Source: Octopus bimaculoides
Taxonomy: Eukaryota
Length of the DNA: 64,000 nt
Assembly (NCBI RefSeq): GCF_001194135.2
Contig: NC_068986.1
Span: forward strand, 41,322,661 to 41,386,660
Direction of reading: 5' to 3'
Shown here: piece after piece, positions 9,113 to 45,915 of the stretch
Position numbering within the stretch: position 1 is the stretch's first letter
How the letters are laid out: every line of letters begins with the position of its first letter
Made by a program: the position numbers and the translations under genes
The notes under the pieces: model-generated
Databases searched by the model: none
Told to the model about the DNA's origin: nothing
What the model saw: only the letters and a program-made list of their open reading frames with translations

Positions 9113-9151
<39 letters not shown>

Positions 9152-10183: not shown

Positions 10184-11346
10184 ATTCCGATTCTGATGAA
10201 GTGGTAATTATTGGCTCAGAAGGCTTAGATGATACAAATGACGGAGATGTTATCTTTGTATCACAGTACAAATCTTCTTCAGAACCCATTACCATAGATT
10301 GTACAACATCTAAAGAAGCAGAAAATGACAGTGCCAAAGTTGTTCATTTAAATGAAGAACAGCACTGTGAAATGGATGAAGATGATGTACAAGATATAAG
10401 TACTATTTCCTCAATTAAACTTGCAGACTTCTGTCAGCGTTCCAGTCAAATCTACAATGACGATAATGATCCCACAGATCAGCTTGTTATAAAGCCCCGT
10501 GACTCACTTGGATCTTTAAGCATTGGTAATAACTTTGGTCTTTCTCTCTCGGTGGAAGAACACAATAAAACTCAGTCAAAGCCAGTAATGGTTGTTGATG
10601 TTTCCCCAAGAATTGAGACTCCAATGGAAAATGATGGTGAGCCTTGTACTCATGAACTGAGTGTTTGTGATAAATGCATACCAGACAAAGAGGAAAATTC
10701 TGAATCTCGTATGGATTTTAGGACTAATTTTGACAACACTGAGAATAAAGTGATCATGAAAAAAGAAGAGAATGTCTTGCCCCAAAACTCAGGAATTTGT
10801 AAATGGAATGTTGATGAGCCTGTTACGGATAATTGTTCTGGTCAAAAAGCCAGTGGTTTACAACTTCAAGAAGAAGAAGATAATGACACAAGTGTTACAA
10901 TTACTCCTTGTAGCCAGACAGCTAATATGTTGTCATCAAAATATGATCCCTGCTGTTCAGATTCTTCATCAAATCCAAATCTTATTTATCATTGTATTAA
11001 AGAAAAGAATGGCATCAGTGAACACCCTGTGGCTATGTGTCAAAAGCTGAAAACAAAATTCTGCCACTCTTCTGATCCTTCATCGCCAAACAATTCTCCG
11101 GATGTTACATCGGTAATTGATCATGGCTCCCCTCGAAAGAAGCACATGTTAACTTCACGAACATGGATTCCAGCCTCTGTAATGGCAGAAGAGGATAATC
11201 AAAGAGCAGTAAAGAAAGGTGCTTGTGTAGCTTGCAAAGCACTTGTAAAAGAAGATGAAGGTTCATCTTGTGTTGATCACCATCTTACTTGTAGGGGATG
11301 TTTGGAGGACAAAGTAAAAGCAGTTCTAAGTCGAAGATGTTTAGAG
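10184..11346 (+). CDS. SIM-RING-PARP gene, first identified coding exon (1163 nt): SIM-like motifs, acidic disordered region, first six RING ligands
   Basis: Strong acceptor ttttctctttctttctag| at 10183 (phase 1) and donor GAG|gtaagt at 11347 (phase 0), inside the 417-aa ORF. Encodes DSDEVVIIGSE, DGDVIFVS, EPITIDC, VMVVDVS, and ends CVACKALVKEDEGSSCVDHHLTCRGCLEDKVKAVLSRRCLE (C-x2-C-x11-C-x3-H-x2-C-x2-C). Confidence 0.88.
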
Positions 11347-11526
11347 GTAAGTTATTAGTTGCATGTAGTTATTTACTGCTCAGTTTTAAAATGTATAATG
11401 TGACTACAATAACATTTCTAGATAAAACCATATCATTAATAAGATTACATTCAGTTTCTAAACAGCTTCCTTTTTGTTCTATTTCAATAAATTTTGAGCC
11501 ACAGTAATTTGCTGATTATTTTTCAG

Positions 11527-11569
11527 TTGAAGTGTGACTGCTATTTCTTCTTGAAATACATGTCTCCTT
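11527..11569 (+). CDS. SIM-RING-PARP gene, 43-nt exon completing the RING (LKCDCYFFLKYMSP)
   Basis: Acceptor attatttttcag| and donor ctt|gtaagt. Length 3n+1 exactly bridges phase 0 (11346) to phase 1 (37873), supplies the missing Cys ligands and gives LELKC-x12-ELRRCLP, matching the spacing I recall for RNF216 RING1 (LELSC-x12-ELEKVLP). Confidence 0.75.
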
Positions 11570-13010
11570 GTAAGTGGCCTCTACTCTTTGGAGCTGGCTA
11601 GTTTCATGCCACATATGCCCAAAATCTCCAACCTCACTCACCTCTCCTCCTCTTATCACTCATTTTGTGTCCACTTGTCTCACTAGGTCCTCCACTTACT
11701 GGTTTCCTCAGAACATCAGGTATCTGGACTTTCCTGCAACTGTTAATTTACAATTGTTTCGTTGCTGTTGTTCAGCTTATCTTAGACGGCCTGCAAAAAC
11801 CAGACCAAGTCATTAAAAACAGTATTGTATGTCAATGAAATTGTTACTAGGCTAACAAATAGCTGAATTTAATGTTAATTAGATATGATGACGACTGTTA
11901 CTGAGGTACGGCTGAAAGTGTCAGACTAATTACTCAGAAAAACTGAGTGTTTAAATATCTAAAAACAATGGAGATGAGTTTGACAGGATCAGCTGATTGG
12001 ACATATAGACAATGAAATTTGGCGTGGATTTAGTCTTTAAAACCAAATGGTGATTACTCTATCTTGAGAATAACCACTATTTAATGAGTATAAGCAGTAT
12101 ACAATTTTAGTTTAATTATCAAAAGCAAGTGAATTTGAGTGATATTTGCAGTAGAATAAACACATAACACATGAAATATATACATGACACCTTTCCTAAA
12201 TAGCCATTGCACTTCAGTATATGAATTACATATATCAAGATACACCTAAAAATATTGCTACTGGTCCCTCACCAAGCCACTTCCCAACTCACAACCTTTG
12301 GTGTAATGCCAAATCTCATCCCAAAATTTCCTTTCAACTAACTTCCTGAAACCATTAATATAGATGCCACATGTTTCTGTGTTAACTTCTAAAACATGGT
12401 ATGATGCCAGATCTAAAAATGTACTTCCTCACAAACACTTCTGTTAGTGTTTAATATGGACACTGCCATCTTTACTTTTGGGATTTGGACAGCATGGCCA
12501 CAAAAAAAAGAAAAAATACTAAGTTGGAAACCATATTGCTTTGCTAGAAAACTTTCATTCTGCAACAAACCAAGTTCTTGATTGACAATGTTAAAGAATG
12601 CTTTTTTTTTTATATATATATTACAATTAATCTAATTTGAGAGAATATTTTAAAAATCTGTTTTATGTTTGAAGTGGTTATATTTATAATTCATGAAAAG
12701 ATATGTCCAGGAAGTAAACTATTGTTAATTAAAAGTACATGTGTACTTGTACATACAATATATTTACTCATGCAAAGTATACATGCTTTTAGTTTTCATA
12801 AACATCTCTTTGCTAAATCTTGCAAAACACATTGCATGTTACTGTAGATAATTAATATTTCATAATTAATTCAACGACTTTTTTTTTTGCAATATTTTCT
12901 CTGGAATTTTCTTTTATAAACTAAAATAAATGGTATTAATACTGTTTTATAGTCACTTTGGTCTATATGATGCTTTTAATCTTAGTCTTGAAACAATTTA
13001 ATCACAATTG

Positions 13011-13919
13011 TTGTGTGTGTATGTGTGTGTTAACAGACTGGTAGGGTCAGAATATTAACTTGCTTTTGAAGGGCAGAAACAGACATACATAGATAGAATA
13101 AAATTACTTGGAAATTAGTTCAGCAAACAAGATGAAGATAGTCAGAGACTATCCTCAAACTTTTTACATAGAATATTCTATGTTTTATATATTTACATTA
13201 AAGAAATAGAATTTGACTTTACTTTGTGTGTGTCCAATATTATTGTGGACTACTTCTTAGATGTAAAGAGATTTAAGTTTCCTCTTCACACTTTAATGCA
13301 AGCCTTTATGATATTTCTTTATTTTTACTATTTGCTTTTTGATTTTTTTTTTTTTTGTAATGTATTTTCTTCCATTTTAACTGTTAAAATGTGGTAAAAA
13401 CATTTTGACTTGAACAGATGTCTCCATGATTGTAATTTGCCTCTGTATTTCATAAGTGTTAGTCTAGATCAATTCTTTGTGTCCATTTAAAAAAGAGGAC
13501 AATCAGAATTCTAAAAATGTTCCATTAATGTATTTGGAGTTTTTGTTATGAAAATGCCAATTGTTTGTAATACCAACTTGGATTGCAATCTCATAAAGAA
13601 ATAAAGGAAAACATTCTATAGCTGCTGTCGCTATTGCTAGGGAAGAAAAGAGACTTTTTTTCCAGGTAGTATATTCTTGTATTTGTTCCTTAGTGAAGTC
13701 ATTTAATTTACTTTGTCATGAATTTCTGTGATAGGGACTACAACAATGTACATGTATGTTGCTGTGTGTGTATGCGTGTGTGTTAACAGACTGGTAGGAT
13801 CAGAATATTGACTAGTTATTGAAGGACAGAAATATAGACATACATATCAAGGATTAAATGGGTATTGTTTGGAAATTAATTCAGCAAATAAGATGAAGAT
13901 AGTCAGAGACTATCCTCAA
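13011..13919. repeat. Diverged ~150-bp direct repeat pair (13011-13158 and 13763-13919)
   Basis: Both read tgtgtgtg...ttaacagactggtagg(g/a)tcagaatatt...cagcaaa(c/t)aagatgaagatagtcagagactatcctcaa. Confidence 0.85.
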
Positions 13920-15411
13920 TTGTCAATTTTACAGCCAGTTACTTACTATCAAAGTTGGTATGAGTTATACCAACTATTACAAACTACAGGAAAATTCCAA
14001 TCGCATTACTTCGAAATAAATATAGTAAGTGTAAATGGAGAGAAAAACCTTTGGATTATGAAAAATTCTTTAGTTCAATACTTGAATTTCTGAAAGTAAC
14101 TGATATGAGACATAGCAATCTATCCAACTAGAGTTGTTTTTATTTTTTTATTTATTTATTATTTTTTTGAGAGACTTTATCAGATATGCATTTAAGCAAT
14201 ATCAATGAATACAATCTAAAATAATATGCATTTCTATTTATTGAGACAATCTGTTTTTACTGATTGTTAATTCCAATCTAAACAGGAAGAAAAACCTATT
14301 TAACATTAGTTAAATTAGCTTTGGCTAATTTATCTAGAAAACAATTTTAGAAATTTGATTACCTAATCATTTTTTAAAATTATTTTATTCTCCCCCCACA
14401 CACACATACACACACGCACACACGCATGTGTGAGTATGTGTGCATGTTGAAAAAATGCATAATCATACTAGTCTTCTTATTCCAAGGAATTAGATTTATG
14501 TATTGAATGAGATTGCAAAAAGCACAATAGTATCAGCAAAAATTTCCACTATGTTTGATATTAAAGGATCTTTATCTTGAGTTTGTTGTAACATTAGTGT
14601 GGTTGAATAGGTAGGTTCATTGAGTTATAATCCATGGGGTCAAAATCGGCTACAGTGATCTATTATTTTTTTGTACGTGTGAATAATTGATGAGTTGCTA
14701 AGATCATTATCTTGCTATTAAAACAAACATCTCCTTTCATATGCCAGTAAGAAAACAGATTCAATATAGATATATGGAGTATTTATTTGGGGTTTCAACT
14801 CTGGAATGGAATAATGATTTAATTCTATTCCCCTGAACTGCCTTAAACTCTACTCTAGATAATCCTATACAAGTGTTGGGGTGTATGTTATGCCACATTG
14901 GTGTAAGGAAACACAGATCATGCTCCTATACATGTAAGACATCCAGTTGTGAAACTACCTTAAAGAAAATCCAATGGAATTCTACAGAAAATCTTAGTTG
15001 GTTTGTAAGTCAATGCCAATCCAGATTCTTTCCAAACTATTATTATTTAGGTGGATTTATATACGACCAAAAAAATCATGAGATTGTTTAAGATTTCATG
15101 AATATTTTTTTATCTATATTCACAAGGATTCTCCCTATATAATTTGTAAGTCATTGATTTGGTCACTCGCGATACAAATGTAATCTACTGAATAAATGTA
15201 TATATAAATATATAAACAAGATTAAAAGTTGTACATTTATTTGTATGCAACAACTCCGGATTAGAAATTGAAAAATTATAATCTAGTTGAGAGAATTAAA
15301 TCATAATGGAATCTCGTTGACTGACATGCTATTTAATACTGTTTTCATAAAGAATCTAAACCATTATTTATTTATAATTCTTAGATAAATAAATTTTTAC
15401 ACTTGTGTGCT

Positions 15412-15444
<33 letters not shown>

Positions 15445-15448
<4 letters not shown>

Positions 15449-15574
15449 CTTGCATTTAAATGGAGGCGTGTATGCTCACGCGCACACATTATATATATAT
15501 ATATATATATATAATGTGTGTGCGTGAGCATGTGTGCGCGTGAGCATACACGCCTCCATTTAAATGTAAGTCAT
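15445..15574. repeat. Near-perfect palindrome with ~45-bp arms and a (TA)n core
   Basis: atgacttgcatttaaatggaggcgtgtatgctcacgcgcacacat recurs as its reverse complement (one mismatch) ending at 15574. Confidence 0.9.
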
Positions 15575-15974
15575 TGCTATTATGTTAAATTGTCGTATGT
15601 CCAAATTGACCAAATGCAGTTTTTTGAATATTTATTTTTGCTTGCAATAGTCGGTTCTTTTGGTCAAACTACCATATCTCGAGCTGCTTCAGATGCTAAG
15701 ATATCAAAAATAATCAAAGTGTAGTACGATTACCACGGTTTTGCTATGAAATGGTGAGACTATTATTTTGTTTTCTGAAAAAGCAACGTTTTGGACTTAA
15801 AACACTTTTGCATAATAGCAACAAAGTATATTTAAATATATGTAGTTAATTGCAAGCTACCGTGCATATGGTTGGGAACAATATCAGAGGAAGGTTAACA
15901 GGGAAAATAGCTTTTGTATGTGGAAGATGCATAGGTACAATAAATACCGAAAATGTACAGAAAATAGGCTCCAT

Positions 15975-17085
15975 TAACTGCCAGTGGAGCTAGCTGGAGG
16001 TAGTAGATAGCTTCCATTGTCTAAGTGACTAAGTTAGTAGCGGAGGTAGATGCTCCAGAGCATAGCTGTGAAAATAAGATTAGTCAGGGCAAAGTTCAGA
16101 GAGCTCCTACCTCAGCTAGCAGCAAAGGGCCTCTCTCTCAGAGTGGAAGGCAGATTGTAGGATGCCTGTGTGTAAACAACTATGCTAGATGGCAGTGAAA
16201 CATGGCAGCCAAGGACGTGCATAAGCTTGAAAGGAATGGAACCAGTATGCTTCGTTGGATGTGCAATGTCAGTGTGCATGCTCAACAGAGTGTAAACATC
16301 TTGAGATAAAAGTTAGGCATAAGAGGCATCAGATGTGATGACTGTGTAAGAGAGATGACTGTGCTGGTATGGTCATGTGATGTGTATGGATGAGGATATC
16401 TGTGTAAACAAGTGCCGAACTCTGTGTAGGGAAACTGTAGTAGAGGTAGACCCAGGAAGACCTGGGACGAGGTGGTGAAGCATGATCTTTGAACTTTGGG
16501 CCTGACAATGACTGGTGACTGAGACCTTTGGCGATATGCTGTGCTTGAGAAGACTTGTCAAGCCAAGTGAAATCATAGTTCTGGCTGATGCTGGTGTTGC
16601 ATATCTGGCATCTGTGCCGGTGGCATGTAAAAAGTGCCTTTCAAGCATTGGGCCTTATGGAGGCACAGTGGCTGAGCTTCTTTCGGGTGTTGGGCCTTGT
16701 GGAGGCACAGTGGCTGAGCTCTTTGCGAGTGTTGGGCCTTGTGGAGGCACAGTGGCTGAGCTCTTTGCGAGTGTTGGGCCTCACAGAGGCCAAGTGGCTG
16801 AGCTCCTTTTGTGCATTGGGCCTTACGGAGGAAAAAGTGGCTGAGCTCCTTTCGAGCGTTGAGCTTCACAGAGGCAATGACAAAGATCTTTGATTTTATG
16901 TCATGTTTGAGAAGACCCCATCAAACCGAGCAAAATCGCAGTCATGGCTGATACCTACACTCTTGAAGCAGTTAGCATTAGAAGGGACATCCAGCCGTAG
17001 AAACCATGCCAAATCAGATTGGAGTCTGGTGCAGTCTTCTAGCTTGCTAGCCCTGGTCAAACTGTCCAACCTAATGATGATGATG
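15975..17085 (+). mobile_element. 5'-truncated RTE-clade LINE (RT C-terminus, 3' UTR, (ATG)n tail)
   Basis: Decayed translation KFRELLP..KGLSLRVEGRL..ACV..MLDGSETW..KLERNGTSMLRWMCNVSVH..KLGIRGIRC..WYGHVMCMDED..RGRPRKTWDEVVKHDL, typical of the RTE ORF end; finishes atgatgatgatg. Confidence 0.88.
16650..16860 (+). repeat. 42-bp minisatellite, five copies, inside the RTE element
   Basis: Unit gggccttgtggaggcacagtggctgagctctttgcgagtgtt; four 42-bp units and one 43-bp unit. Confidence 0.92.
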
Positions 17086-21086: not shown

Positions 21087-21248
21087 GGTGCAGGAGTGGC
21101 TGTGTGGTAAGTAGCTTGCTTACCAACCACGTGGTTCCAGGTTCAGTTCCACTGCGTGGCACCTTGGGCAAGTGTCTTCTACTATAGCCTCGGGCCAACC
21201 AAAGCCTTGTGAGTGGATTTGGTAGACGGAAACTGAAAGAAGCCCATC

Positions 21249-21282
<34 letters not shown>

Positions 21283-21416
21283 NNNNNNNNNNNNNNNNNN
21301 NNNNNNNNNNNNNNNNNNNNNNNNNNNNNNNNNNNNNNNNNNNNNNNNNNNNNNNNNNNNNNNNNNNNNNNNNNNNNNNNNNNNNNNNNNNNNNNNNNNN
21401 NNNNNNNNNNNNNNNN

Positions 21417-21451
<35 letters not shown>

Positions 21452-21672
21452 TGATGATGTATATGTTTGTGTGTCGCTGTTTGTCCCCTCAACATCGTTT
21501 GACAACTGATGCTGGTGTTTACGTCCCCATCACTTAGCAGTTCGGCAAGAGAGACCAATAGAATAAGTACTAGGCTTACAAAGAGTAAGCCCTGATGTCA
21601 ATTTGCTTGACTAAAGGCGGTGCTCTAGCATGGCCGCAGTTAAATGACTGAAATAAATAAAAGAAAAAGAAT
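21087..21672 (+). mobile_element. tRNA-derived SINE with internal (TA)n microsatellite (gap N 21283-21416)
   Basis: A-box tggctgtgtggt and B-box ggttcagttcc, then ggcaccttgggcaagtgtcttc, internal (TA)n and tail ggcggtgctctagcatggccgcagt...tgactgaaa plus an A-rich end. Near-identical copy at 57625-58052. Confidence 0.88.
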
Positions 21673-27699: not shown

Positions 27700-28790
27700 A
27701 GACTTTAATCTACTAAATAACATTCTACCACATCTAACTTCATAATCATTTGGCAGACAATACAGTGAGTATAATAGTAGGAGATAAACTGACAGTAAAC
27801 CAAGTCCACACCGACATATGGTGGGTGCAATACAAATTCATTGGAAGGGACTTGGATTTGGTGCAGGTCGGTTCAGACAGTTTGCTAGTTGCATAGTGAA
27901 TGCAGATTTGTTAGCAATTGTCAAAACAAGGGGAACAGAGAGAGGAGAGCTTCATTTGATCCAATGTGCTCAAGGACAGATGACGAAATAGGAAGAACAT
28001 GTTGTTGAGAGAAAAATAAGTTGGAATGAGATATGGAGGTGGACTACATCACAGCGAAGTTTTCTGATTCATTCATCTTATGATGTCTTGTCATTGCCTA
28101 CAAATCTAGTAAGATGGCACATCTCAGAAAATGATATATACAAATGTGGAAAAGTCAGAACACTGAAACATATTCTTTCCAACTGTTCACTGGCATTAAA
28201 TAGATATACATGGAGACAGAATCTGGTTCTTAAGGTTATCTTCAATGCTATAAAGAACCAAATTGTTCTCATCAACAGTGAAAAAACCATTGAAAGTACC
28301 AAGCAGAGATTTCATTACTTTCATGCGCTCAGGACGACAGATCCATTTCAAGAAGAAACTTCCTATGAGCAATGAAAAGTGGAACGTCTTTTGGGAGGTG
28401 GCTGAAGATTTACCAGGGTGCTGAGGATTCTTTCCCATCCCAGTTACGAAAAAAATGGGTATTATAATGTGGTGTAAAAGAAAGAAAGTGGTAAATCTAG
28501 TCGAGTTAACTGTTCCGCATGAAGATAATATGGATGCTGCTCGCTCTTGAAAGATTGACCATTATGTAAACCTCTTTGAGGTATGTGAAGACACAGGCTG
28601 GAAAGTGGAGCATTTTCCAATCGAAATCAGATGTAGAGGATTTGTTGGACACTGTTGTTATCATTAGACCTATCTCATCGTAAAGCAAATACCACCATGA
28701 GCAATATCCAAACTACAGTGGAAAAAGCTAGCCACTGGATTTGGTTAAAAAGAGACAATGAGTGATGGCTAGAAGAATATTGAGCTATAT
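27700..28790 (+). mobile_element. 3' fragment of an RLE-type non-LTR retrotransposon (HERO/NeSL-like)
   Basis: ERKISWNEIWRW..FLIHSSYDVLSLPTNLVRW, zinc-knuckle remnant KCGKVRTLKHILSNC..RYTWRQNLVL, and restriction-like endonuclease remnant IIMWCKRKKVVNLVELTVPHEDN..GWKVEHFPIEIRCRGFV, with stops and frameshifts. Confidence 0.82.
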
Positions 28791-32669: not shown

Positions 32670-32698
32670 TTTATATATATATATATATNNNNNNNNNN

Positions 32699-32783
<85 letters not shown>
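32670..32783. repeat. (TA)n/(CA)n compound microsatellite with a 10-N gap
   Basis: Directly visible. Confidence 0.9.
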
Positions 32784-32787
<4 letters not shown>

Positions 32788-33403: not shown

Positions 33404-33786
33404 TGTTGTTGGCACTCCGTTGCTTACGACGTCGAGGGTTCCAGTTGATCCGATCAACGGAACAGCCTGCTCGTGAAATTAACATGCAAGTGGCTGAGCA
33501 CTCCACAGACACGTGTACCCTTAACGTAGTTCTCGGGGATATTCAGCGTGACACAGTGTGACAAGGCTGACCCTTTGAAATACAGGCACAACAGAAACAG
33601 GAAGTAAGAGTGAGAGAAAGTTGTGGTGGAAGAGTACAGCAGGGTTCACCACCATCCCCTGCGGAAGCCTTGTGGAGCTTTAGGTGTTTTTGCTCAATAA
33701 ACACTCACAACACCCGGTCTGGGAATCAAAACTACGATCCTATGACCGCGAGTCCACTACCCTAACCACTGGGCCATTGCGCCTCC
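33404..33786 (-). mobile_element. Full-length tRNA-derived SINE with 14-bp TSD
   Basis: Minus-strand head ggaggcgcaatggcccagtggttagggtagtggactcgcggtcataggatcgtagttttgattccc (A/B boxes) and (AAC)n tail. Flanked by acattggaccacat at 33390-33403 and 33787-33800. Confidence 0.93.
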
Positions 33787-33819
33787 ACATTGGACCACAT
33801 ACACTCAATACATTCTACC

Positions 33820-34330: not shown

Positions 34331-36351
34331 ATGTACCTGTCTTAAAATACTAAGTGCCTTTATCACTCAGTCCCTATATCATGCATCCCTTTTAACACCA
34401 TCATTTATGCTTCTATCAGCCATACCTCTGACTCTTTAAAGAGGTTGGTGAGTAAATATGTGCAGTTCTGAGCTCCTGTCAGGCATGTTGTGGACATGGA
34501 TATCTCTCTAGTGTTGGTGTCTCAAAAAATGTGCTCAGTATACTCATAAAAGTGTATAGTTACCTTGTCAAGGACATGACTCATTTTTAGTGCTGGTGCC
34601 AAGAAAAGTAATGCAATACATTCTGTAAAGTGGTTTGTGTTTGGAAAGGCATCCAACCATTGAAACTGAATCAAAAATGAAATGCATTAGCAAGATGTGG
34701 TACTCCAATTCATCTTGGTAAGCAGTTCACTCGAATACATACTGAATATGTACTTATTCTGATCAGAGTAAGCCATCCAACCCCTATCATCATGGAAAGT
34801 AGTGCATTTAGAACTACATTATTCACTGTGCCCAGTTTTGAAGACAATAGGATGTAACTTGACTGCTACTACTAGCAGTTTGAGTGATCATGTAGAAGCT
34901 TCTTCTCATTGGTTTGCATCACTATTTATTGTTAGACATGCTATCATAAGATGTAGAATTTGTGGTCTCATTTTAAAGATGGTTAAAAATTTGTGAAAAA
35001 TAATTTTAGCTGCTACATTGTGAAAGTAGCCCAACTATATAGCAACTCATTTATTAGCTCAATGCAGTGGTAGTAAATAGGGAGTGTTTACAAAAATTCA
35101 AATTTAGATCAGGTATCTAGGATATAAGCCACAGCAGGTAAGATAAAAACAGCTGCAGATATTAAGCTGTTATAAATTAAACAGAAATCTACTTCATCCA
35201 TGACAACATGGTTAAATGGACACTAACCCAAGAAGTGTGATGATAGTGATTCTGTTTTTAAACTCTTGAACTTTGATTGACCTTTTCATGTCTAAAGTTA
35301 TTTCTGTTATAATCTGTCAGCTGTTATGCTACCACTGTTTTAAATGCAGATTGATACATGCATTCTGATCCTTCATTCATAGTTCATCATTGAAGCAGTT
35401 GGATATACTGATGATGATTGACAACCATGCAAAACAGCTTAATAATAATAATAATAGTGGTTGTGGTGGCAGCGATGGTGGTGGTGGTGGTGGTGGTGAT
35501 GTAAAAAAAAAAAGTGGGGGAAATATTTTCACCAGAACACACAGCTGTTACTTTTATATTTTTATGTAACTATCATTCTTAGATCACTTAGCAGTGAAGA
35601 AAAACACTAGAGAAGGCAAATGATCAATCAATAAAATGCATATTTCTGCCATGAATGCAACTTGTTTGAATAAAAGACCATCTTCTTTAGACTACATGAA
35701 TGTACATGTGTATGCACATACAATATACCAAGTGGAATGGAGGAGAAAGTGTTAAACTTAGCATGCTAACGTTCTGTCTTCTTCAATTTCTATGTTTTAA
35801 ATTGAAAGTGGTTATAATATTTTGAAGTGGTGAGGGAATTTTTTTCGTAAGTGAAAAAAAATATATTGCAAAATTTTCACTTTAAGGCTTTTGGCTAACA
35901 TGTTAGTTGATATAAAAATAACATTTTTCATTATTAATATTTTTCCATTTTTTTTTTTATGGAGCTGTCCTCTATTTATGTTTTATTTTAATAAAGTAAT
36001 ATAATGTTATTTCTTAACATTTTAAACTTTAATATACAAATTTTTAAAATCAAATTGCAGTAAGGAATATATTTACTGTGTGTGTGCACATGTGTGTGTG
36101 AGTTAATACCCCAGAGGAAATTATTTTTGAAGGAATCTTTAGTTGTGTGTGTGTAATATTATAGGTTATAATTGGAATGCTAGGTTTCCAATATATATAT
36201 TTAAATTAGACTTTAAGATATAGGATTCTCATGCCTTTACCAATGTACACATGAATAAATCTGTTTATTTATATATTCATATTTTTTTTTCAGACATCTG
36301 TAAAGTGCCTAGAAGCAGGCTGTAACAATTTCTATTCAAAACGTATGTATA

Positions 36352-36360
36352 CTCTCTCTT

Positions 36361-36450
<90 letters not shown>

Positions 36451-36452
36451 TC
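36352..36452. repeat. (CT)n microsatellite
   Basis: Directly visible. Confidence 0.95.
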
Positions 36453-37872: not shown

Positions 37873-38105
37873 ATGAACTGAGGCGTTGTTTGCCTGCAAT
37901 GATAGTGGATATTCTTGAAGAAGTTCTTGAACAATATTATGTTGATTTCATAACAAATATGCTAATGAAATCCTATTCTCCAAGTGATACCTCTGTGGGG
38001 CCTGATAATGAAATGACTGTAGGAGAACTTGAACGTCCTCGAAAGCGGTTAGCAATCAGTTATGATAGCTTACCAGAAAACTGGGTTGAAATGGAATCAA
38101 AATTT
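37873..38105 (+). CDS. SIM-RING-PARP gene exon (233 nt): post-RING helix, NLS-like RPRKR, pre-PARP LPENWVEM motif
   Basis: Acceptor ttctattttccag| (phase 1) and donor TTT|gtaagt (phase 0). Encodes ELRRCLPAMIVDILEEVLEQYYVDFITNMLMKSYSPSDTSVGPDNEMTVGELERPRKRLAISYDSLPENWVEMESKF. Confidence 0.88.
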
Positions 38106-38736
38106 GTAAGTATTTGAAGAAATAAAATGCAAAAATATTTTTCTGACATTCAATAGTTGAAAACTGTAACTAATCCTTTCTTAACATTTGTTCTTCATTT
38201 GAAATATTTAAAGCACTTTCAGTTATTGATAGCCACCCAGTACCACTTAATTTTCATCTTTTATCAAATAGATTGGTGATGTAAATTTATGAAATATAGC
38301 ATGAATTAAGTAACCATTTTTATATATGTGTTCACAACAAATCCCTTCTTGGATTCTACTGTATGACTACTTCTTAGAGAATCAAAGTTGTTTTATGTTG
38401 CAAGTATAAAAATGACACTATGGTTAAATTGTTGTCCTCAACAGAAGCTGATTCCCTACAAGCTTTGAGCAACTTTTTAAAATTGTGTTGATTTTTGTAA
38501 ATCATAATACATGGCAGTAAGAATTAAAAATGATTATGCAGTAAGGATAGAGAAAAAGAAAACATTAGCTCAGTGACTGGTGAAATTAGTCATTGAGCTA
38601 ATATTGTCTTTTCCTCACTGCATAATTATTTTTAATTTGTTTCATGTTAACACTAACTTAACTATTGTTTTTCATGCAGATGGTCTCTGAGTTATATATT
38701 TCTTTAAAGAAATAACTGTTCCTTTTGTTTTTTCAG

Positions 38737-38882
38737 AGTAATCAGCTATTCGTTTTGGATTCTGATTCTCAAGAATATGTCAATGTGTCTAGAATGTTTT
38801 TGTCTTCAATGCATTATCCAGCCACTGAAATAGTACGAATCTCTCGAATCCAAAATCCTATTTTATGGAAATATTACTGCTT
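38737..38882 (+). CDS. SIM-RING-PARP gene exon (146 nt): start of the PARP catalytic domain
   Basis: Acceptor ccttttgtttttttcag| (phase 0) and donor TT|gtaagt (phase 2). Encodes SNQLFVLDSDSQEYVNVSRMFLSSMHYPATEIVRISRIQNPILWKYYCL, the S.EY..V...F and RIQN..LW signature. Absent from the ORF track (<60 aa). Confidence 0.93.
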
Positions 38883-39890: not shown

Positions 39891-41475
39891 GTTGCTGGTG
39901 CTGCATAAAAACACCCAGTACACTTTGTAAAGTGGTTGGTTTTGAGGACATTCAGACATTCAGTCAAAGAAATCATGCCAAAACAAGCATGAAACCTAGG
40001 CAGCTCATCAGCTGGCCAACTTCTGTTAAACCATCCAACTCATGCCAGCATGGAAAACGGACATTAAATGATAATGATGATGATGATAATTATTTTCTCT
40101 ACTATTTGCAAAAAAAAAAAAAACTTTTTATTTTTCATCTTACAGAAAAAAGCGTGAGATGGTACAAGAGAATGATGGTCTTAATGTTGAAGAAAGACAA
40201 CTATTCCATGGTACAAAAAGCAAAGTGGTTGAACCTATATGTCGTAAGGGATTTGACTGGAGGCTCTGTGGAAAACATGGTACTGTTTATGGACATGGTA
40301 AGTAGCTTTTATTGTGTGCTGCATTATAACTTTTGTCTAAATGACATAAAAAGTAGGAGACATGAAATATGTCAAAAAGGATTCAGAAAAATTAATTTTT
40401 TATACCCAAAGATTGGTTTGAACATTGTCTAAACCCTTTTATTCAATCTACTCAATTGAAGGCATCATGTTTGTCCAGTACAATTTGATTGAAAAAAAAT
40501 ATGAATGAAATATTTTTGTTTAAAAATATTGGTCCATTGATTTTCTCACCAACAAATTTTAACAAAAGACACACACACTCACACACTGTGCCATGAGAAA
40601 GTACTTAGCATTTTCTGAAAAGTGGTTAGTATTGGGAAAAGTATTCAGCTGTAGAAATCATGCCAAAGCAGACATAGCAGTATGATGTAATCCTCCAACA
40701 TGTTGATCCCTGTTGGACCATCCAACCCATGCCAGCATGGAGAGTGGGCATTAATTGACAATGATGATAATGATCATCATCATCACTGATTTTATGTCTA
40801 CCCTTCCATGCTGGTAGGACTTTTTGAAGATTACAACTCTATTAGTCACCCGTTTGCCTGACTGGCCTTCGTGCCAGTGGCATGTAAAAGCGCCCACTAC
40901 GCTTTCGGAGTGGTTGGCGTTAGGAAGGGCATCCAGCTGTAGAAACTCTGCCAAATTAGATTGGAGCCTGGTGTAGCCATCTGGTCCACCAGTCCTCAGT
41001 CAAATCGTCCAACCCATGCTAGCATGGAAAGCGGACGTTAAACGACGATGATTACAACATGCTGGAATGTTGTGCATATTCTGTAAGGTGATTAGCATTG
41101 AGAAGGGTATTCATTTGTAGAATAGTATCTATTCTAAAAATTGGGATACACACAATTACCAGATAAGATTGGAGCCTGGTGTGGCCTCCTGGCTTGCCAG
41201 TCCCCAGTCAAACCGTCCAACCTATGCCAGCATGGAAAATAGACGTTAAACAATGATGATGATGATGACAATCATAGATGCACACACATGTACAGTGGGT
41301 TGTTGCACTGTTTCTTTCAACCAAATTTTATTTACAAGGCATTGGATAGAAGGGTATCCAACTGTAGAAGCCATGCCAAAACAGACAATAGAGCTTGGCA
41401 CAGTCCTCCAGCTTGCCAGCTCTATTTAAACCATCCAACCCAGCATGGAGAACAAACATTAAAAGGCGATGATTA
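39891..41475 (+). mobile_element. Cluster of five same-orientation RTE-tail retroposon copies around the HGT exon
   Basis: Copies at ~39891-40090, 40590-40778, 40855-41052, 41056-41270 and 41335-41475, each ending ccatccaacccatgccagcatggaaa..acgttaaa(gat)n-like. Confidence 0.8.
40146..40297 (+). CDS. SIM-RING-PARP gene exon (152 nt): NAD-binding HGT motif and D-loop
   Basis: Acceptor tttttcatcttacag| (phase 2) and donor G|gtaagt (phase 1). Encodes KKREMVQENDGLNVEERQLFHGTKSKVVEPICRKGFDWRLCGKHGTVYGH; His codon 40207-40209. Confidence 0.95.
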
Positions 41476-41519
41476 TTGGTCACCCAAAGTCTGTTAGAAA
41501 ACACTTGTGGTGCACATAT

Positions 41520-41906
41520 TTTTTTTGTTGTCACTCCGTCGCTTACTACGTTGAGGGTTCCAGTTGATCCGATCAACGGAACAGCCTGCTCATGAAATTA
41601 ATGTGCAAGTGGCTGAGCACTCCACAGACACGTGTACCCTTAACGTAGTAGTTGTCGGGGATATTCAGCATGACACAGTGTGACGAGGCTGACCCTTTGA
41701 ATTACAGGCACAACAGAAACAGGAAGAAAGAGTGAGAGAAAGTTGTGGTGAAAGAGTACAGCAGGGTTTGCCACCATCCCTGGAGCCTCGTGGAACTTTA
41801 GGTGTTTTCGCTCAATAAACACTCACAACGCCCGGTCTGGGAATCAAAACCGCGATCCTATGACTGTGAGTCTGCTGCCCTAACCACTGGGCCATTGCGC
41901 CTCCAC
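41520..41906 (-). mobile_element. Full-length tRNA-derived SINE with 11-bp TSD (same family as 33404-33786)
   Basis: Near-identical body to the 33.4-kb copy; ggtgcacatat at 41509-41519 and 41907-41917. Confidence 0.92.
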
Positions 41907-43945
41907 GGTGCACATATAGTTGCCAAGCAAACTGTGTCCTTTTTGAATTTACTTATCATATCCTTCATGTCGTTTTTATCACATTCCTAAATAGAATGAA
42001 AAGCTAATTTGATTTGTGTAGGATTTGAACTGGAAGATAGAATACCATAAAATGTTTATTTTGGTGTTTATCTCTTTAGAAACTTACTATGAAAATACAT
42101 TTTATGATATATAATAATTGGTCATTAAAACATTCTGGTGCTAGAGATTGTGTTGCTGGCATTACAATACTACCTGCTCTGCTGTGGCTTCCTCAAAATA
42201 TAACTATCCCTCTTATGAGATCATTCTCTCACCTTAACAGACATTAAAACTTGTTACTTTAAATTGAATACTCTAAGATTTGTCTCCCTTGTATACATTT
42301 ACATTCTCCAGTGACAGCTCATTTATAATAATGAAAATACAGTACTTTCAATTCTGATCATTTTTCATCACTCCACATTAACAGCATCAGTGCTTAATCT
42401 AATTTTCCACAATGCTACAATCATAAACCATGAATTAAAAAATTCCTTTTATGGTAGATTTCAAAATTATTGAAGGGCATCTATCTTCCATATTGGACTC
42501 ACCCAATTAGAAAGCTTTTAGTGCCAAAAGAAGTAAACCCCCTCCCACAGGTGAACCACCTGTATTATTATTTGAAACTGCCCATAAAGTCTTCAAAATT
42601 CACTATGAAAACAGCAATTGAAGCCTTAAGGCCTAATGTCATTTAAGTTACGTTATCTATGAATTTTTAAAAATTGAACCTGCATTATTGTTCTCAGCAT
42701 AGATGCATCCCTATAGGTTCTTATGTACTTTCATTTCACTCCAGTTACTTATATACTTCCCCACTCTTGCCCTACACAGTCGTTTCAGTTCCTAGATACT
42801 GTTCTAAGAGACCAATAAGTCTTATGGTGCTTGTTCCTCTCCCACTTCAGCTGACCATTAGTTTTTCAGTGGGAAGCTCTTTTACATTTTGACAGATTTT
42901 AGCTTTAGTCCATGCCAGATCCCATACACTCTCCTCACCCAGTATATTTGTTGGGATTGTTTAATTTAGTCACCAACCACTTAACCGAGATAAACTATAC
43001 TGAGTTACATAATGATTACGAAGTGGGTGACTTCAAAAGAGAATAATACCAAATACTTTTAAAAATGCTTTTAAAAAGTGGATCATATTATATCAAATCC
43101 TAATAGCTACAGGTCCACTTAAATATTTCAACATTATATAAAATATGTCTCAGGGTGTAAGTGAAACAATTTATATCATAGTTCAAGAAGAGTGTCCAAA
43201 AAGAGTTTATTTTAAATGCAAACACCAATTCCTAGCAGATGCATTATAAATATTAGATAGTACAAGATAACTCCATGAAGAAGAGAACTACCCTAATATC
43301 AGTATTGTTTGATTGAATGAAAATGTAATACAGTATATTCCTGACTAAATTTTAACTGCCTCCAGGTTTTAAATCAACATATTAGATCTTGTCAAACCTT
43401 ATTACTTAATTAGTATAGTAGATATAATGATCATATCTATGTTATGCAAATGTCCCAAGAGATTAGACTTAACGAGTTATGTACACTACATGTACTAAAG
43501 AATTTGTATTGTTGCTTTAGCCAACTGAACTGCTGTAGAAATTCATAATTAGCTTACAAAAAGAGTGTGTTCAGGTTCCTATAGCAAGTGAAATAATGTA
43601 ACTATCATACTATTTAATAATGTAATAATTATTTTTACCATACCTTATTACTACTACAATTTACCTAAGTAAACTTTACAATCTAGGCCATAACTTAAAT
43701 TCTCATTATCTTACTGACTCTACTCAAAGCATTATAAACCCCTAGATAAAATATAAAAACGACAAAACAATATGATTTGCACATGCATACACACCTTATA
43801 CTTTTGTGCCACTATAATCTTAGGGAAAATATTGCAAAAAGCAATAAAGTATATTGAGATAATGTAAAATTCACTTAGATTTACTACATTTCTATTTTTC
43901 CTTTTTAATTGTATCCTCTTTTCATTTTTGTCTTTTTCATTGTAG

Positions 43946-45915
43946 GCTCCTACTTTGCGGGCGAGGCTTCATACTCTCATCAATTTACTGATGACATTCG
44001 TATTAAGCGGCAGCGTCCGATTCCAGCTGGTCGTGTCAGTTCTAACAACATTGCAATGACCACTAAAGTCTTCTGCAATCCTTACAATAAAAATGCTTTC
44101 CTCAAGTTGAGTCCAAGTATTAATATTCCAAGTATGAACCCAGCTGCACCACTGCAATTAACAGGCTATACAAGTTCAGTGACCACCTATACTGCTCAAG
44201 GAAGCATAATGGCCAGTTCTAGTAACAACCCATTTGTTAGTCAAGCTTTATTAGGAGCTGCACCTCCTGGAGCTGGATCAAATATATGTTGTCCGACTAT
44301 CAAAGCTACTAACAATCCAAACACTGCTGTAAACAGAGTACCGTCTAATCGCATAAACATTGTCATGATGCCAATGACAGATGCAGACAAGAACCAAACT
44401 GTTCAGAATATGCCTAATATGCAAGACACTTCATCAGTTGGCATTGCTCCTAATGTCCCATCATCTTCTTCATCTTCAACACCCTCATCATCATCTTCAT
44501 ATTCATTACAAAATTTGACTGTATCCTTTCCTTCCAGTGGTAATGTTGGTCCTACTGTAACTGCTAACAATACAGTTATGCAGTCTCCGCTTGTGCTGTC
44601 AACAGCCCCTAAACAGCTAGTACACCAACAACTGCAGACAGTGCCAGTGACTAGCACACCTCAACATATCCCTCTGGTTGTACCCTTCCAGGCAGGAACT
44701 GCTGTTAATCCCAAAAGCCATTTGGCTTCACACTCACACTCTAAATTAATCTTTGGAGGATTGTCACAACCACAACAGCAAATGCAACAACAGCAACAAC
44801 AACAACAGCAGCAGCAGCAGCAAAAATACCTTCTGCAGCGCATCACACAACGACTTCAGACACAACCCACACAACGACTGCAGGCACAAGCAACACAACG
44901 ACTCCAGCAACCAGCGATACCATCGCAGGCGCTGCAGTCACAGCAACTCTCACAAGCTCAACAGCCATTATTGCAATTGCAGGCTGTGCAACAACTACAA
45001 CCATCACCGCAATTACAGACTGCTGCACAAGTTCCACAGTTAGCCCAACCGCAACATCATCAGCAACCACAGCAAGTTGGGCCAACACTGCAACAGGTCA
45101 CATCAACTTCAGCACCTCAGCTGATAACACTCGGAGAATTTTTGTCCCCTTTTCAAACAGGAGCTTCGGCAGCTAAAGTTAACATGGTGTCTCACACCCA
45201 GCCGAAACTTGTTTTTGGAAGAGTGCCATCTCAACAACAATCTCAACAACAGCAGCCTCAGCAACAAGTAATGGCCCAGCAAGCTGGTGTACCTCCACAG
45301 AACCAACCCCAAGCCCCACCCCAGCATATACAAGCTGCACAACAAACACCACATCATCTACATCACTATCACCATCACCACCATCACCACCACCATCACC
45401 AAGCCCCAGTGCAACCACAGCAGCAACCCCAACAAATATTCCTGCGGAAAGGTTTTGTTGTGCCCATTCCACCAGGAACTTCTGGTCCTAAAGTCAGCAC
45501 TGTTGGCCATTCACAATCCAAACTAATAGTGAAAGTACCACCAGCACCACCAGCACCATCCCAACAACAACAGCTGGTCCCACAGACCCAGCCTCAGCCC
45601 CCTACCCCACAAGCAATCCAGGCTCAACAGACAGCAAACACACTCCAACTCTACTGCCAAAATGGAGAACCCCATACGACACGGACCTCAATACCTACAA
45701 ACTGCACGCGGAAAATGTTCATTGCCAAAGTTCTCGTGGGCAAGTACACAGGTGGTAACAGCAGCCTGAAGAAAGCCCCACCTTTATATCCATGTGCCGA
45801 ACCATTTGGAAAATGCTATGACTCTTGTGTAGACAACATATGGGACCCAAAGATTTTTGTTATATTTGATAGTGCCCAAGCTTACCCCGATTATTTAATA
45901 GAATATGTTGTATAG
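43946..45915 (+). CDS. SIM-RING-PARP gene, terminal exon (1970 nt): PARP11/PARP12/TIPARP-like catalytic domain C-half with a ~570-aa low-complexity insertion
   Basis: Acceptor tctttttcattgtag| (phase 1). Encodes GSYFAGEASYSHQFTDD, the insert, then RKMFIAKVLVGKYTGGNSSLKKAPP..CYDSCVDNIWDPKIFVIFDSAQAYPDYLIEYVV-stop (TAG 45913-45915). Triad Tyr at 43951 and Ile at 45853. No stop in 656 codons. Confidence 0.94.

What the first reader, a model, noticed from the sequence alone, without database searches (positions are those of the whole stretch)
10184..45915. SIM + lone RBR-type RING1 + mono-ART in one protein: a candidate SUMO/ubiquitin/ADP-ribose crosstalk enzyme
The six exons join in frame to give SIMs, then a RING, then a PARP domain (seen). 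The RING spacing C-x2-C-x11-C-x3-H-x2-C-x2-C and its ELRRCLP tail match what I recall of RNF216-type RING1. The IBR and RING2 that follow RING1 in RBR ligases are absent: exon 37873-38105 runs from the post-RING helix to the pre-PARP motif. The WWE/CCCH domains of vertebrate PARP11/12/TIPARP are also absent from the identified exons. In mammals ubiquitination and mono-ADP-ribosylation are coupled across separate proteins, e.g. PARP9-DTX3L (established). I know of no SIM-RING1-PARP fusion; novelty and function are inference.
Basis: partly seen in the sequence, partly recalled or inferred. Interest (0 to 1): 0.85.

Follow-up and report, generated by a model that had tools for sequence, protein, structure and literature searches.

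The report
RNF216-derived RING1 fused to PARP
This is a real gene for a mono-ADP-ribosyltransferase whose front half (SUMO-binding motifs plus one zinc-finger domain) descends from the ubiquitin ligase RNF216. It belongs to an uncharacterised family found in molluscs, annelids and brachiopods, so it is one more member rather than a one-off invention.

Summary
The 43-nt exon at 11527-11569 should be replaced by a 49-nt micro-exon at 36294-36342, which supplies the last two zinc ligands (C-x4-C). The revised model is exons 10184-11346, 36294-36342, 37873-38105, 38737-38882, 40146-40297 and 43946-45915. It aligns as single blocks with more than 25 predicted proteins from gastropods, bivalves, a chiton, a brachiopod and annelids. 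All of them carry N-terminal SIM-like motifs, a RING and a split PARP domain in one chain. The first coding exon (Met plus a first SIM) was not found.

The RING is an RBR-type RING1 closest to RNF216: profile versus PDB E 1.9e-11, and top Foldseek match. It shares RNF216's 49-nt micro-exon at the same position and phase. A sister subfamily still keeps the IBR. No member examined has RING2, which the PARP domain replaces. The PARP domain is PARP12-like with an H-Y-I triad, and carries a 576-residue open, low-complexity insert.

Both assembly gaps lie in the 25-kb intron, inside (TA)n runs.

Function is inferred: a SUMO-directed mono-ADP-ribosyltransferase with a ubiquitin/E2-docking remnant, not an autonomous RBR ligase. 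The family is in databases but I found no paper on it.

The parts
10184..11346 (+). Exon A (phase-1 start, phase-0 end). It encodes SIM2 (EVVIIG, 10198-10215), SIM3 (DVIFVS, 10246-10263), a further SIM-like VMVVDVS (10585-10605), about 310 aa of poorly conserved linker, and the first six zinc ligands of RING1 (C347 C350 C362 H366 C369 C372; 11224-11301).
   Evidence: ORF and splice sites. The exon boundaries are conserved in a related species while the flanks diverge. The SIM pattern is conserved in orthologs.
36294..36342 (+). Micro-exon B' (49 nt, phase 0 to 1), TSVKCLEAGCNNFYSK + 1 nt.
Evidence: Found in the scan and spliced. All eight ligands are invariant in the alignment. Scallop and amphioxus RNF216 have a micro-exon of the same 49-nt length, phase and position.
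37873..38105 (+). Exon C: split codon H, then ELRRCLP (37875-37895), the helix AMIVDILEEVLEQYYVDFITNMLMK (37896-37970, homologous to the RBR RING1-IBR helix), a linker, and the pre-PARP motif LPENWVEME (38070-38096).
   Evidence: It aligns to RNF216 ELEKVLPQTIL. Mercenaria has the same phase-1 acceptor.
38737..38882 (+). Exon D: the first part of the PARP catalytic domain (QEYVNV...RIQNPILWKYYC).
40146..40297 (+). Exon E: PARP domain with the triad His (LFHGT, 40201-40215) and the donor-site loop.
43946..45915 (+). Exon F: the PARP triad Tyr (GSYFAG), a 576-aa Q/P/S/T-rich insert (43987-45714), then the last strands of the PARP domain with Ile at the Glu position (KIFVIFD, 45850-45870). The stop codon is at 45913-45915.
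   Evidence: In 44000-45700 the coding frame has 0 stops, against 23 and 21 in the other two frames.
11527..11569 (+). It has good splice signals but lacks the C-x4-C pair and is not conserved.
21283..21416 (.). Assembly gap inside the 25-kb intron A/B', within a (TA)n run of an interspersed repeat.
32689..32698 (.). 10-N assembly gap inside intron A/B', within a (TA)n run.

Best explanation
The locus encodes a 5'-incomplete ortholog of a lophotrochozoan protein family. The family arose when the front part of an RNF216-like RBR ubiquitin ligase became joined to a PARP12-like catalytic domain, which took the place of the catalytic RING2.

Shown:
- The domain order is tandem SIM-like motifs, a disordered linker, RING1, the RING1-IBR helix, a linker, and a PARP domain with an H-Y-I triad.
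- One PARP surface loop carries a long disordered insert.

Inferred mechanism:
- The PARP domain is an active mono-ADP-ribosyltransferase.
- The acidic-flanked SIM cluster directs it to SUMO or poly-SUMO-modified proteins.
- RING1 and its helix, the most conserved non-catalytic part, act as a docking or regulatory module for ubiquitin, a ubiquitin-like protein or an E2~Ub conjugate. They do not act as a ligase: there is no RING2 cysteine to accept ubiquitin and no linchpin residue to activate E2~Ub.
For: Gene model:
- All junctions are AG/GT and in frame.
- Single BLASTP blocks cover aa ~360-604 across five junctions with Pinctada (46%), Haliotis, Potamilus, Liolophura and others.
- The scallop ortholog has an identical exon plan.

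RING1:
- The eight ligands are invariant.
- A 26-sequence profile hits RNF216 (8eb0/7m4m) at E 1.9e-11, with the next hit, ARIH1, at 8.8e-4.
- The AlphaFold model has pLDDT 79. Its top Foldseek match is RNF216 (rmsd 2.2 Å over 76 columns). Nearly all of the next best matches are RBR RING1 domains (ARIH1, parkin, ARIH2, RNF144A, HOIL-1), with canonical RINGs such as RNF125 and TRIM32 lower.
- An exhaustive profile search found bona fide RNF216 (Branchiostoma) as the only named, full-length hit without a PARP domain. Several unnamed or fragmentary hits were not identified.
- RNF216 has the same 49-nt phase 0-to-1 micro-exon.
- Sister paralogs keep a Pfam IBR between RING1 and PARP.

PARP:
- PARP12 is the best PDB match (E 1.6e-50). 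LFHGT, GSYFA and IFVIF are conserved.

SIMs:
- The pattern PIIIxS-acidic, VVLV, acidic-VIFV-S recurs at the N-termini of orthologs from three phyla.
- It is identical in a related species whose exon A is otherwise about 67% identical.

Background from the literature:
- RNF216 has SIMs. Its RING1 binds UbcH7, and its RING1-IBR helix binds allosteric ubiquitin (PMC9834252).
- The linchpin position is R/K in only 3 of 27 sequences.
Against: - No transcript of this species spans the junctions; only unspliced exon-A contigs turned up.
- The first coding exon is missing.
- No activity, SUMO binding or E2 binding has been measured for any family member.
- The loop-1 residue that canonically contacts the E2 is not conserved, so E2 docking may have been lost.
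- Pfam does not recognise the RING.
- SIM assignment rests on motif and conservation only.
- The 576-aa insert could contain an unrecognised intron.
Confidence: 0.6

Rival explanations
1. The RING works as an autonomous RING-type E3. The protein would then be a true SUMO-targeted ubiquitin ligase that also mono-ADP-ribosylates, which is the reader's 'crosstalk enzyme' taken literally.
For: The RING has a complete C3HC4 ligand set and a conserved central helix. Tandem SIMs next to a RING recall RNF4-type ligases.
Against: The RING is of the RBR RING1 type. Such domains hold E2~Ub open and non-reactive and need RING2 (PMC9834252). RING2 is absent. The linchpin position is acidic or polar in 24 of 27 sequences, and the loop-1 hydrophobic contact is not conserved.
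Confidence: 0.15
2. RING1 (with the IBR in the sister subfamily) holds E2~Ub beside the NAD+-binding PARP domain that replaced RING2. The two chemistries would then be coupled in cis. The result would be ADP-ribosylation of ubiquitin or the E2, or ubiquitin esterified to ADP-ribose. This would be a convergent analogue of Deltex RING-DTC.
For: The PARP domain sits exactly where the catalytic RING2 sits in RBR ligases, and in the sister subfamily RING1-IBR is retained intact. Deltex RING-DTC shows that a RING next to an NAD+/ADP-ribose pocket can make such hybrid marks (PMC7615817, PMC7500938, PMC12000418).
Against: This is pure analogy. A disordered linker of about 50 residues separates the helix from the PARP domain, and the AlphaFold model gives no confident interdomain packing (pTM 0.56). 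E2-contact residues are not conserved.
Confidence: 0.15
3. The join is an artefact: a RING-bearing gene at 10-11.4 kb and a separate PARP gene at 37.9-45.9 kb.
For: No spliced transcript of this species was found. The intron is 25 kb long and contains two assembly gaps. The Mercenaria RefSeq model starts inside the exon-C equivalent.
Against: The RING domain itself is split over exon A, the micro-exon and exon C. More than 25 orthologs, including transcript-length Logan contigs, encode all parts in one chain. Exon C begins in phase 1 with conserved coding sequence upstream of the Mercenaria ATG.
Confidence: 0.03
4. The copy in this window is a decaying or catalytically dead gene, a pseudo-enzyme like PARP13 or PARP9.
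For: It has the longest insert in the family (576 aa). The first exon was not found. No annotated protein or transcript for it was retrieved.
Against: All exons are open. The eight zinc ligands and the H-Y-I triad are intact. The insert frame has 0 stops against 21-23 in the other frames. Exon A is conserved in a related species.
Confidence: 0.07

Closest known systems
RNF216 / TRIAD3 (RBR E3 ubiquitin ligase)
   Same: It has N-terminal SIMs followed by a RING1 with the same ligand spacing (C-x2-C-x11-C-x3-H-x2-C-x2-C ... C-x4-C), then the EL..LP motif and the RING1-IBR helix. It is the best sequence and fold match for the RING. Its 49-nt micro-exon has the same position and phase.
   Different: RNF216 continues with an IBR and a catalytic RING2 (Rcat) and has RNF216_N/UBA regions. 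Here RING2 is replaced by a PARP domain, and in this subfamily the IBR is gone too.
PARP12 (ARTD12), with PARP11 and PARP7/TIPARP
   Same: The catalytic domain matches at E 1.6e-50 over almost the full domain length, with the H-Y-I triad and the pre-PARP P..W motif.
   Different: There are no WWE or CCCH zinc-finger domains. A 17-576-aa disordered insert sits in the loop after the ASYSHxY helix. The N-terminal half comes from an RBR ligase.
Uncharacterised lophotrochozoan RING1-PARP proteins, e.g. Mizuhopecten XP_021340693.1, Mya XP_052799938.1, Liolophura XP_064599714.1, Lamellibrachia LSAT2_027767, and Saccostrea XP_062610349.1 ('RNF216-like')
   Same: They share the architecture, insert position, N-terminal SIM pattern and exon plan. 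The window's gene is an ortholog of the IBR-less subfamily.
   Different: The window's copy has the longest insert. No cephalopod member was among the named hits, and the window's species is unknown. A sister subfamily (Saccostrea, Ylistrum, Dreissena, Lingula and others) keeps the IBR.
Deltex E3s (RING-DTC) and the DTX3L-PARP9 pair
   Same: They juxtapose an E2-binding RING with an NAD+/ADP-ribose-binding domain, linking ubiquitin and ADP-ribose chemistry (PMC7615817, PMC7500938).
   Different: There is no DTC domain here. The RING is of the RBR RING1 type. In DTX3L-PARP9 the two activities sit on separate chains. Any functional analogy is untested.
RNF4 / RNF111 (SUMO-targeted ubiquitin ligases)
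   Same: They have a cluster of acidic-flanked hydrophobic SIMs N-terminal to a RING.
   Different: Those RINGs are canonical, with a linchpin, and they activate E2~Ub. Here the RING is RBR-type and mostly lacks a linchpin, and the output domain is a PARP.
Other PARPs fused to ubiquitin-system domains: Dictyostelium U-box-Macro-PARP and fungal UBCc-PARP (Citarelli et al. 2010, PMC2964712)
   Same: They are precedents for E3-like or E2-like modules in one chain with a PARP domain.
   Different: The ubiquitin-system domains, PARP clades and lineages all differ. None derives from an RBR ligase.

Membership tests
PARP / ARTD superfamily | PARP catalytic domain (Pfam PF00644) above the gathering score | tested here: met
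   85.2 bits for the full model and 99.6 bits with the insert removed, against a cut-off of 26.7.
Mono-ADP-ribosyltransferase class of PARPs (H-Y-I/L triad) | His and Tyr of the NAD+ site present, with the catalytic Glu replaced by Ile/Leu | tested here: met
   Alignment to PARP12 structures shows LFHGT, GSYFA and IFVIF(D) conserved.
Mono-ADP-ribosyltransferase class of PARPs (H-Y-I/L triad) | NAD+-dependent mono-ADP-ribosylation activity | not testable with these tools
   Needs a biochemical assay.
PARP7/11/12 subgroup (architecture) | WWE domain upstream of the catalytic domain | tested here: not met
   No WWE hit in the model or in orthologs P0059, P0060 and P0171.
PARP7/12/13 subgroup (architecture) | CCCH zinc fingers | tested here: not met
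   No CCCH family hit.
RBR E3 ubiquitin ligases | RING1 domain | tested here: met
   The profile hits RNF216 RING1 at E 1.9e-11. Nearly all of the best Foldseek matches are RBR RING1 domains.
RBR E3 ubiquitin ligases | IBR domain after RING1 | tested here: not met
   No IBR hit in the model or in subfamily-1 orthologs, and no Cys-rich exon elsewhere in the window. The IBR is present in the sister subfamily.
RBR E3 ubiquitin ligases | RING2/Rcat with a catalytic cysteine | tested here: not met
   Absent from the model, the window and all fusion-family members examined.
RNF216 orthology group | RNF216-specific regions (RNF216_N, UBA_RNF216, Rcat_RNF216) | tested here: inconclusive
   These families are recorded for amphioxus RNF216. 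However, they did not appear even for that protein in my own Pfam scan, so the local library may lack them. Only the RING1 resemblance and shared intron positions are shown.
SUMO-interacting motif (SIM) cluster | Hydrophobic core [VIL]x[VIL][VIL] or [VIL][VIL]x[VIL] flanked by acidic or Ser residues, in tandem | tested here: met
   DSDSDE-VVII and DGD-VIFV-S match, and the pattern is conserved across three phyla.
SUMO-interacting motif (SIM) cluster | Binding to SUMO or poly-SUMO | not testable with these tools
   Needs a binding assay.
SUMO-targeted ubiquitin ligases (RNF4-like) | Canonical RING that activates E2~Ub (linchpin Arg/Lys after the last Cys) | tested here: not met
   The linchpin position is D/E/N/S/T in most sequences and R/K in 3 of 27. 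The window has Asn.
Deltex family | DTC domain C-terminal to the RING | tested here: not met
   No such Pfam hit; the C-terminal domain is a PARP.
Lophotrochozoan RING1-PARP family (unnamed) | Collinear SIM cluster, RNF216-type RING1, helix, and PARP split by an insert, with a shared exon plan | tested here: met

The most novel reading that the evidence does not exclude
In this family a PARP domain has taken the structural place of the RBR catalytic RING2. RING1 (plus the IBR in the sister subfamily) would then present E2~ubiquitin to an NAD+-using active site. This would yield ubiquitin-ADP-ribose hybrid marks, or ADP-ribosylated ubiquitin or E2, on SUMO-marked targets. All three modification systems would be wired into one polypeptide, convergent with Deltex RING-DTC.
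Probability: 0.15. Interest if true: 0.85.

Novelty: new variant of a known kind. Interest (0 to 1): 0.6.

Why it matters
In mammals, ubiquitin, SUMO and ADP-ribose signalling are coupled through separate proteins: DTX3L-PARP9, RNF146 with tankyrase, and RNF4. Here evolution has placed parts of all three systems in one chain and kept that arrangement across at least three phyla.

The shared micro-exon shows how it arose. An RNF216-like ligase lost its catalytic RING2 to a PARP domain, and one branch then lost the IBR as well. This gives a natural series: RING1-IBR-RING2, then RING1-IBR-PARP, then RING1-PARP.

The series allows two direct questions. What does an RBR RING1 and its ubiquitin-binding helix do without RING2? 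Can a PARP domain use E2~Ub or ubiquitin as a partner or substrate?

The practical results are more modest. They are a corrected gene model for this locus, evidence that the Mercenaria RefSeq model is 5'-truncated, and a defined family that current Pfam-based annotation labels only as 'PARP'.

Tried and rejected
rejected.
- **Pfam on the RING region:** no hit except zf-RING_14 at E 0.36. Single-sequence phmmer against PDB found nothing. Only profiles worked.
- **First coding exon in 1-10183:** searched by ATG-to-phase-1-donor scans and SIM1-like patterns, with no convincing candidate. It may lie in the 8408-8499 gap or upstream of the window.
- **IBR/RING2-like Cys patterns on both strands of the window:** none found.
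- **RING or micro-exon in the 10 kb upstream of the Mercenaria gene:** none. The intron is presumably longer.
- **Spliced window protein:** I used ortholog substrings instead.
- **Third homology search, with exon F:** wasted. 8000 low-complexity candidates came back and none passed the threshold, so conservation of the insert in the related species remains untested.
- **Conserved motif inside the insert across phyla:** not found. The inserts are variable low-complexity sequence.
- **Rfam scan of the window:** nothing.
- **Minus-strand ORFs of 90 aa or more:** none looked like a gene by eye. Only one was scanned against Pfam, and it had no hit.
- **Literature searches for the fusion or 'PARP7S':** nothing relevant.
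- **Two-domain AlphaFold model:** no confident interdomain arrangement.

Full report
**What is in the sequence**

The window is AT-rich eukaryotic DNA (GC 34%) with four N runs. On the + strand between 10.1 and 45.9 kb there are open segments bounded by AG acceptors and GTAAGT donors.

Joined in frame, they encode the following:
- two acidic-flanked hydrophobic motifs, DSDSDE-VVII-G and GD-VIFV-S;
- a long non-conserved stretch;
- the half-RING C-x2-C-x11-C-x3-H-x2-C-x2-C;
- ELRRCLP plus an amphipathic helix;
- LPENWVEME;
- a PARP catalytic domain.

Pfam recognises only the PARP domain (PF00644). It scores E 5.6e-24, or E 2.2e-28 once a 576-residue insert is removed.

**The exon that had to be changed**

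Homologs from Lymnaea stagnalis (P0059) and the tubeworm Lamellibrachia satsuma (P0060) read ...KC-x4-C-x7-EL..TLP... at that point.

I scanned the 26-kb interval for AG...GT segments in phase 0 to 1 that contain a Cys pair. This turned up 36294-36342 (tttttttttcag | ACA TCT GTA AAG TGC CTA GAA GCA GGC TGT AAC AAT TTC TAT TCA AAA C | gtatgt), encoding TSVKCLEAGCNNFYSK.

Evidence for the new exon:
- With it, all eight zinc ligands line up with the homologs.
- In contigs from a related species, exon A and its splice sites are conserved while the flanks diverge. That contig ends 16 nt further on, so this point alone is weak.
- The scallop ortholog and amphioxus RNF216 each have a 49-nt micro-exon of the same phase at the same place (see 'Origin').

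**One gene or two**

BLASTP of the revised 1236-residue model gives single alignment blocks from residue ~360 (inside the RING, exon A) to ~604 (start of exon F). These blocks cross all five junctions. They come with predicted proteins of Pinctada (46% identity), Haliotis, Potamilus, Liolophura, Gigantopelta, Mya, Lymnaea, Biomphalaria, Patella, Lamellibrachia, Owenia, Lingula and others. A second block covers the C-terminal 65-80 residues.

The RING domain is itself split over exon A, the micro-exon and exon C, so these exons cannot belong to different genes.

The Mercenaria RefSeq model (P0002) begins at a Met inside the exon-C equivalent. The genomic DNA continues upstream with ELRQSLPA, behind an acceptor in the same phase as in the window. 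That model is therefore probably 5'-truncated.

No spliced transcript of the window's own species was retrieved. Only unspliced exon-A contigs turned up, from the same species (P0001, 99% identity) and a related one (P0004).

**The assembly gaps**

Gaps 21283-21416 and 32689-32698 lie in the intron between exon A and the micro-exon, and both sit inside (TA)n runs. The sequences flanking the first gap (21102-21282 and 21515-21662) are copies of an interspersed repeat. Its other copy, at 57625-58027, has about 75 bp between the corresponding repeat parts. The translation of that stretch looks like TA-rich simple sequence.

Ortholog alignments cross the exon A / micro-exon junction with at most a one-residue insertion in the window and no missing residues. 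No reading frame depends on the gaps.

**The missing 5' end**

Exon A begins in phase 1. In orthologs the N-terminus reads M...(S/T)P-I-[IVL]-[IVL]-x-S-acidic run-VVLV-KEE...-acidic-VIFV-S. The window has the second and third motifs.

In the scallop gene the first exon encodes just MNSSPDTPILINSD plus one nucleotide, ending in a phase-1 donor. I could not find an equivalent in 1-10183. It may lie in the 8408-8499 gap or upstream of the window.

**What kind of RING**

| Test | Result |
|---|---|
| Single-sequence search against PDB | nothing |
| 3-sequence profile against PDB | RNF216 first, E 2.8e-4 |
| 26-sequence profile against PDB | RNF216 (8eb0, 7m4m) E 1.9e-11, covering RING1, ELEKVLP and the helix up to the IBR; next hit ARIH1 at 8.8e-4 |
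| AlphaFold model of the RING region | pLDDT 79.4 |
| Foldseek against PDB | best match RNF216 (prob 1.0, TM 0.58, rmsd 2.2 Å over 76 columns) |

After RNF216, nearly all of the next best Foldseek matches are RBR RING1 domains: ARIH1, parkin, ARIH2, RNF144A and HOIL-1. Canonical RINGs such as RNF125 and TRIM32 rank lower.

An exhaustive profile search of 1.84 billion representative proteins returned 66 hits. At least 30 are RING plus split-PARP proteins. The only named, full-length hit without a PARP domain is Branchiostoma RNF216 (P0224), which carries the RNF216_N, UBA_RNF216, RING-HC_RBR_RNF216 and Rcat_RNF216 families. Several unnamed or fragmentary hits were not identified.

**Origin**

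Exon mapping shows that three genes share one structure. The genes are amphioxus RNF216 (L008), the scallop RING1-PARP gene (L009) and the window. In each:
- one exon ends four residues before ligand 7, in phase 0;
- a 49-nt micro-exon follows, with Cys at codons 5 and 10;
- a split codon comes next;
- then (E/Q)L...LP.

| Gene | Micro-exon peptide | Next exon starts |
|---|---|---|
| Window | TSVKCLEAGCNNFYSK | (H)ELRRCLP |
| Scallop RING1-PARP | ESLRCVQSGCDSYYPM | (S)ELKQSLP |
| Amphioxus RNF216 | ASLSCMTDGCDSTFPM | (G)QLEKALP |

RNF216 also has N-terminal SIMs (PMC9834252, Fig. 1 legend).

A sister subfamily retains a Pfam IBR between RING1 and PARP, at or near the gathering score. Its members come from Saccostrea, Ylistrum, Dreissena, Ruditapes, Sinanodonta, Lingula, and second copies in Haliotis and Bradybaena.

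The simplest history is this: an RNF216-like gene had RING2 replaced by a PARP domain, giving RING1-IBR-PARP. One branch, which includes the window's gene, then lost the IBR.

**The PARP domain**

With the insert removed, the best PDB matches are human PARP12 catalytic domains (E 1.6e-50), ahead of PARP15, PARP14, PARP10 and ZAP. LFHGT, GSYFA and IFVIF are conserved, so the triad is H-Y-I, the mono-transferase type. No WWE or CCCH domain is present.

The insert sits in the loop after the ASYSHxY helix in every family member. It ranges from 17 residues (Lymnaea) to 576 (the window) and is S/T/P/Q/N-rich and not alignable between phyla.

In the window the insert is 19% Gln, with poly-Q and poly-H runs and three copies of a ~35-residue motif (...P-F/I-Q/P-x-G-T/A-...K-V-x2-V-x-H-S/T-Q-x-K-L-I/V...). 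Its frame has no stop over 1.7 kb, while the other two frames have 23 and 21. This argues that it is coding, although an internal intron cannot be excluded without RNA.

**How it probably works**

Shown: the domain order and the intact catalytic and zinc-binding residues.

From established knowledge:
- H-Y-I PARPs mono-ADP-ribosylate.
- Acidic-flanked SIM clusters bind SUMO chains.
- RBR RING1 binds the E2 and keeps E2~Ub open for transfer to RING2.
- The RING1-IBR helix is part of the allosteric ubiquitin/UBL site (PMC9834252).

Points bearing on RING function:
- There is no RING2.
- The position after the last Cys (the linchpin in canonical RINGs) is acidic or polar in 24 of 27 sequences.
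- The loop-1 residue that usually contacts the E2 is not conserved.
- By contrast, the central RING helix (CLEEQVK..LTGK) and the post-RING helix (LP..VVDILEEKL...Y.DY) are the best-conserved non-catalytic parts.

My best reading is a SUMO-directed mono-ADP-ribosyltransferase in which the RING1-helix remnant docks ubiquitin, a ubiquitin-like protein or E2~Ub, for targeting or regulation.

Alternatives:
- An autonomous E3 activity is less likely.
- A coupled ubiquitin/ADP-ribose chemistry analogous to Deltex RING-DTC (PMC7615817, PMC7500938, PMC12000418) is attractive but unsupported. The two-domain AlphaFold model shows a disordered ~50-residue linker and no confident packing.

**Known or new**

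Many members are public as predicted proteins. They are named 'uncharacterized protein' or 'Poly [ADP-ribose] polymerase'. One is named 'E3 ubiquitin-protein ligase RNF216-like' (Saccostrea XP_062610349.1) and one 'PARP7S' (Biomphalaria).

Every named member I looked up is a mollusc, annelid or brachiopod. No cephalopod was among them, and I could not identify the window's species.

Literature searches found no description of the fusion. The classic PARP survey lists U-box-Macro-PARP in Dictyostelium and UBCc-PARP in fungi, but nothing RBR-derived (PMC2964712).

The locus is therefore one more member of an existing but unstudied family. The family itself is a new variant among multidomain PARPs.

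**Verdict**

The architecture and the RNF216 link are right, novelty is overstated at the sequence level, and function remains inferred. Interest is 0.6.

Noticed in passing
related proteins P0190, P0192, P0195-P0198, P0201, P0207, P0215 (not in the window): A sister subfamily in bivalves, gastropods and the brachiopod Lingula keeps a Pfam IBR between the RNF216-type RING1 and the PARP domain (RING1-IBR-PARP). This gives an intermediate between RNF216 and the window's RING1-PARP architecture.
   Followed up: partly
L001 9977-10003 (Mercenaria mercenaria CM038775.1): The RefSeq model LOC123535900 (458 aa) starts at an internal Met. Conserved coding sequence (ELRQSLPA) and a phase-1 acceptor lie just upstream, so the model is probably 5'-truncated and lacks its SIM and RING exons.
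   Followed up: partly
window 44450-45560 (inside exon F): The PARP-loop insert contains three copies of a ~35-aa motif (model residues ~837, ~991 and ~1096; core K-x-x-x-V-x-H-S/T-Q-x-K-L-I/V). It also has poly-Gln (CAA/CAG) and poly-His (CAC/CAT) tracts. No counterpart was seen in other phyla.
   Followed up: partly
window 33407-33795, 41526-41913, 55851-56092: Three copies (83-95% identical) of a ~400-bp interspersed, SINE-like repeat. Two of them lie in introns of the gene, and the third abuts the 56118-56265 gap.
   Followed up: no
window 21102-21662 and 57625-58027: Two copies of another interspersed repeat, apparently with an internal TA-rich microsatellite. The 21283-21416 assembly gap sits in that part of the first copy.
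   Followed up: partly
window 2863-3075 (+): A short ORF with a weak, sub-threshold match to the retroviral-type integrase core (Pfam rve, E 0.0046). It is probably a decayed LTR-retrotransposon fragment. An ORF at 27992-28372 looked like a retroelement tail by eye but had no Pfam hit.
   Followed up: partly
related proteins P0215 (Mytilus coruscus 'ABL1') and P0207: These models put fn3 (and, in P0215, SH2) domains in front of RING1-IBR-PARP. They could be gene-model fusions with a neighbouring gene or a further architectural variant.
   Followed up: no
window 11527-11569 (+): A 43-nt segment with perfect splice signals (ttttcag...gtaagt), the right phases and an 'LKC' start mimics the true RING micro-exon only 180 bp downstream of exon A. 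It is a decoy that an ab initio gene finder might also pick.
   Followed up: yes
Precomputed annotations list RNF216-specific Pfam families (PF26191 RING-HC_RBR_RNF216, PF26200 Rcat_RNF216 and others) for amphioxus RNF216. My own Pfam scan of the same protein did not return them, so the local Pfam copy may lack these models. That would explain why the RING here got no Pfam hit.
   Followed up: no
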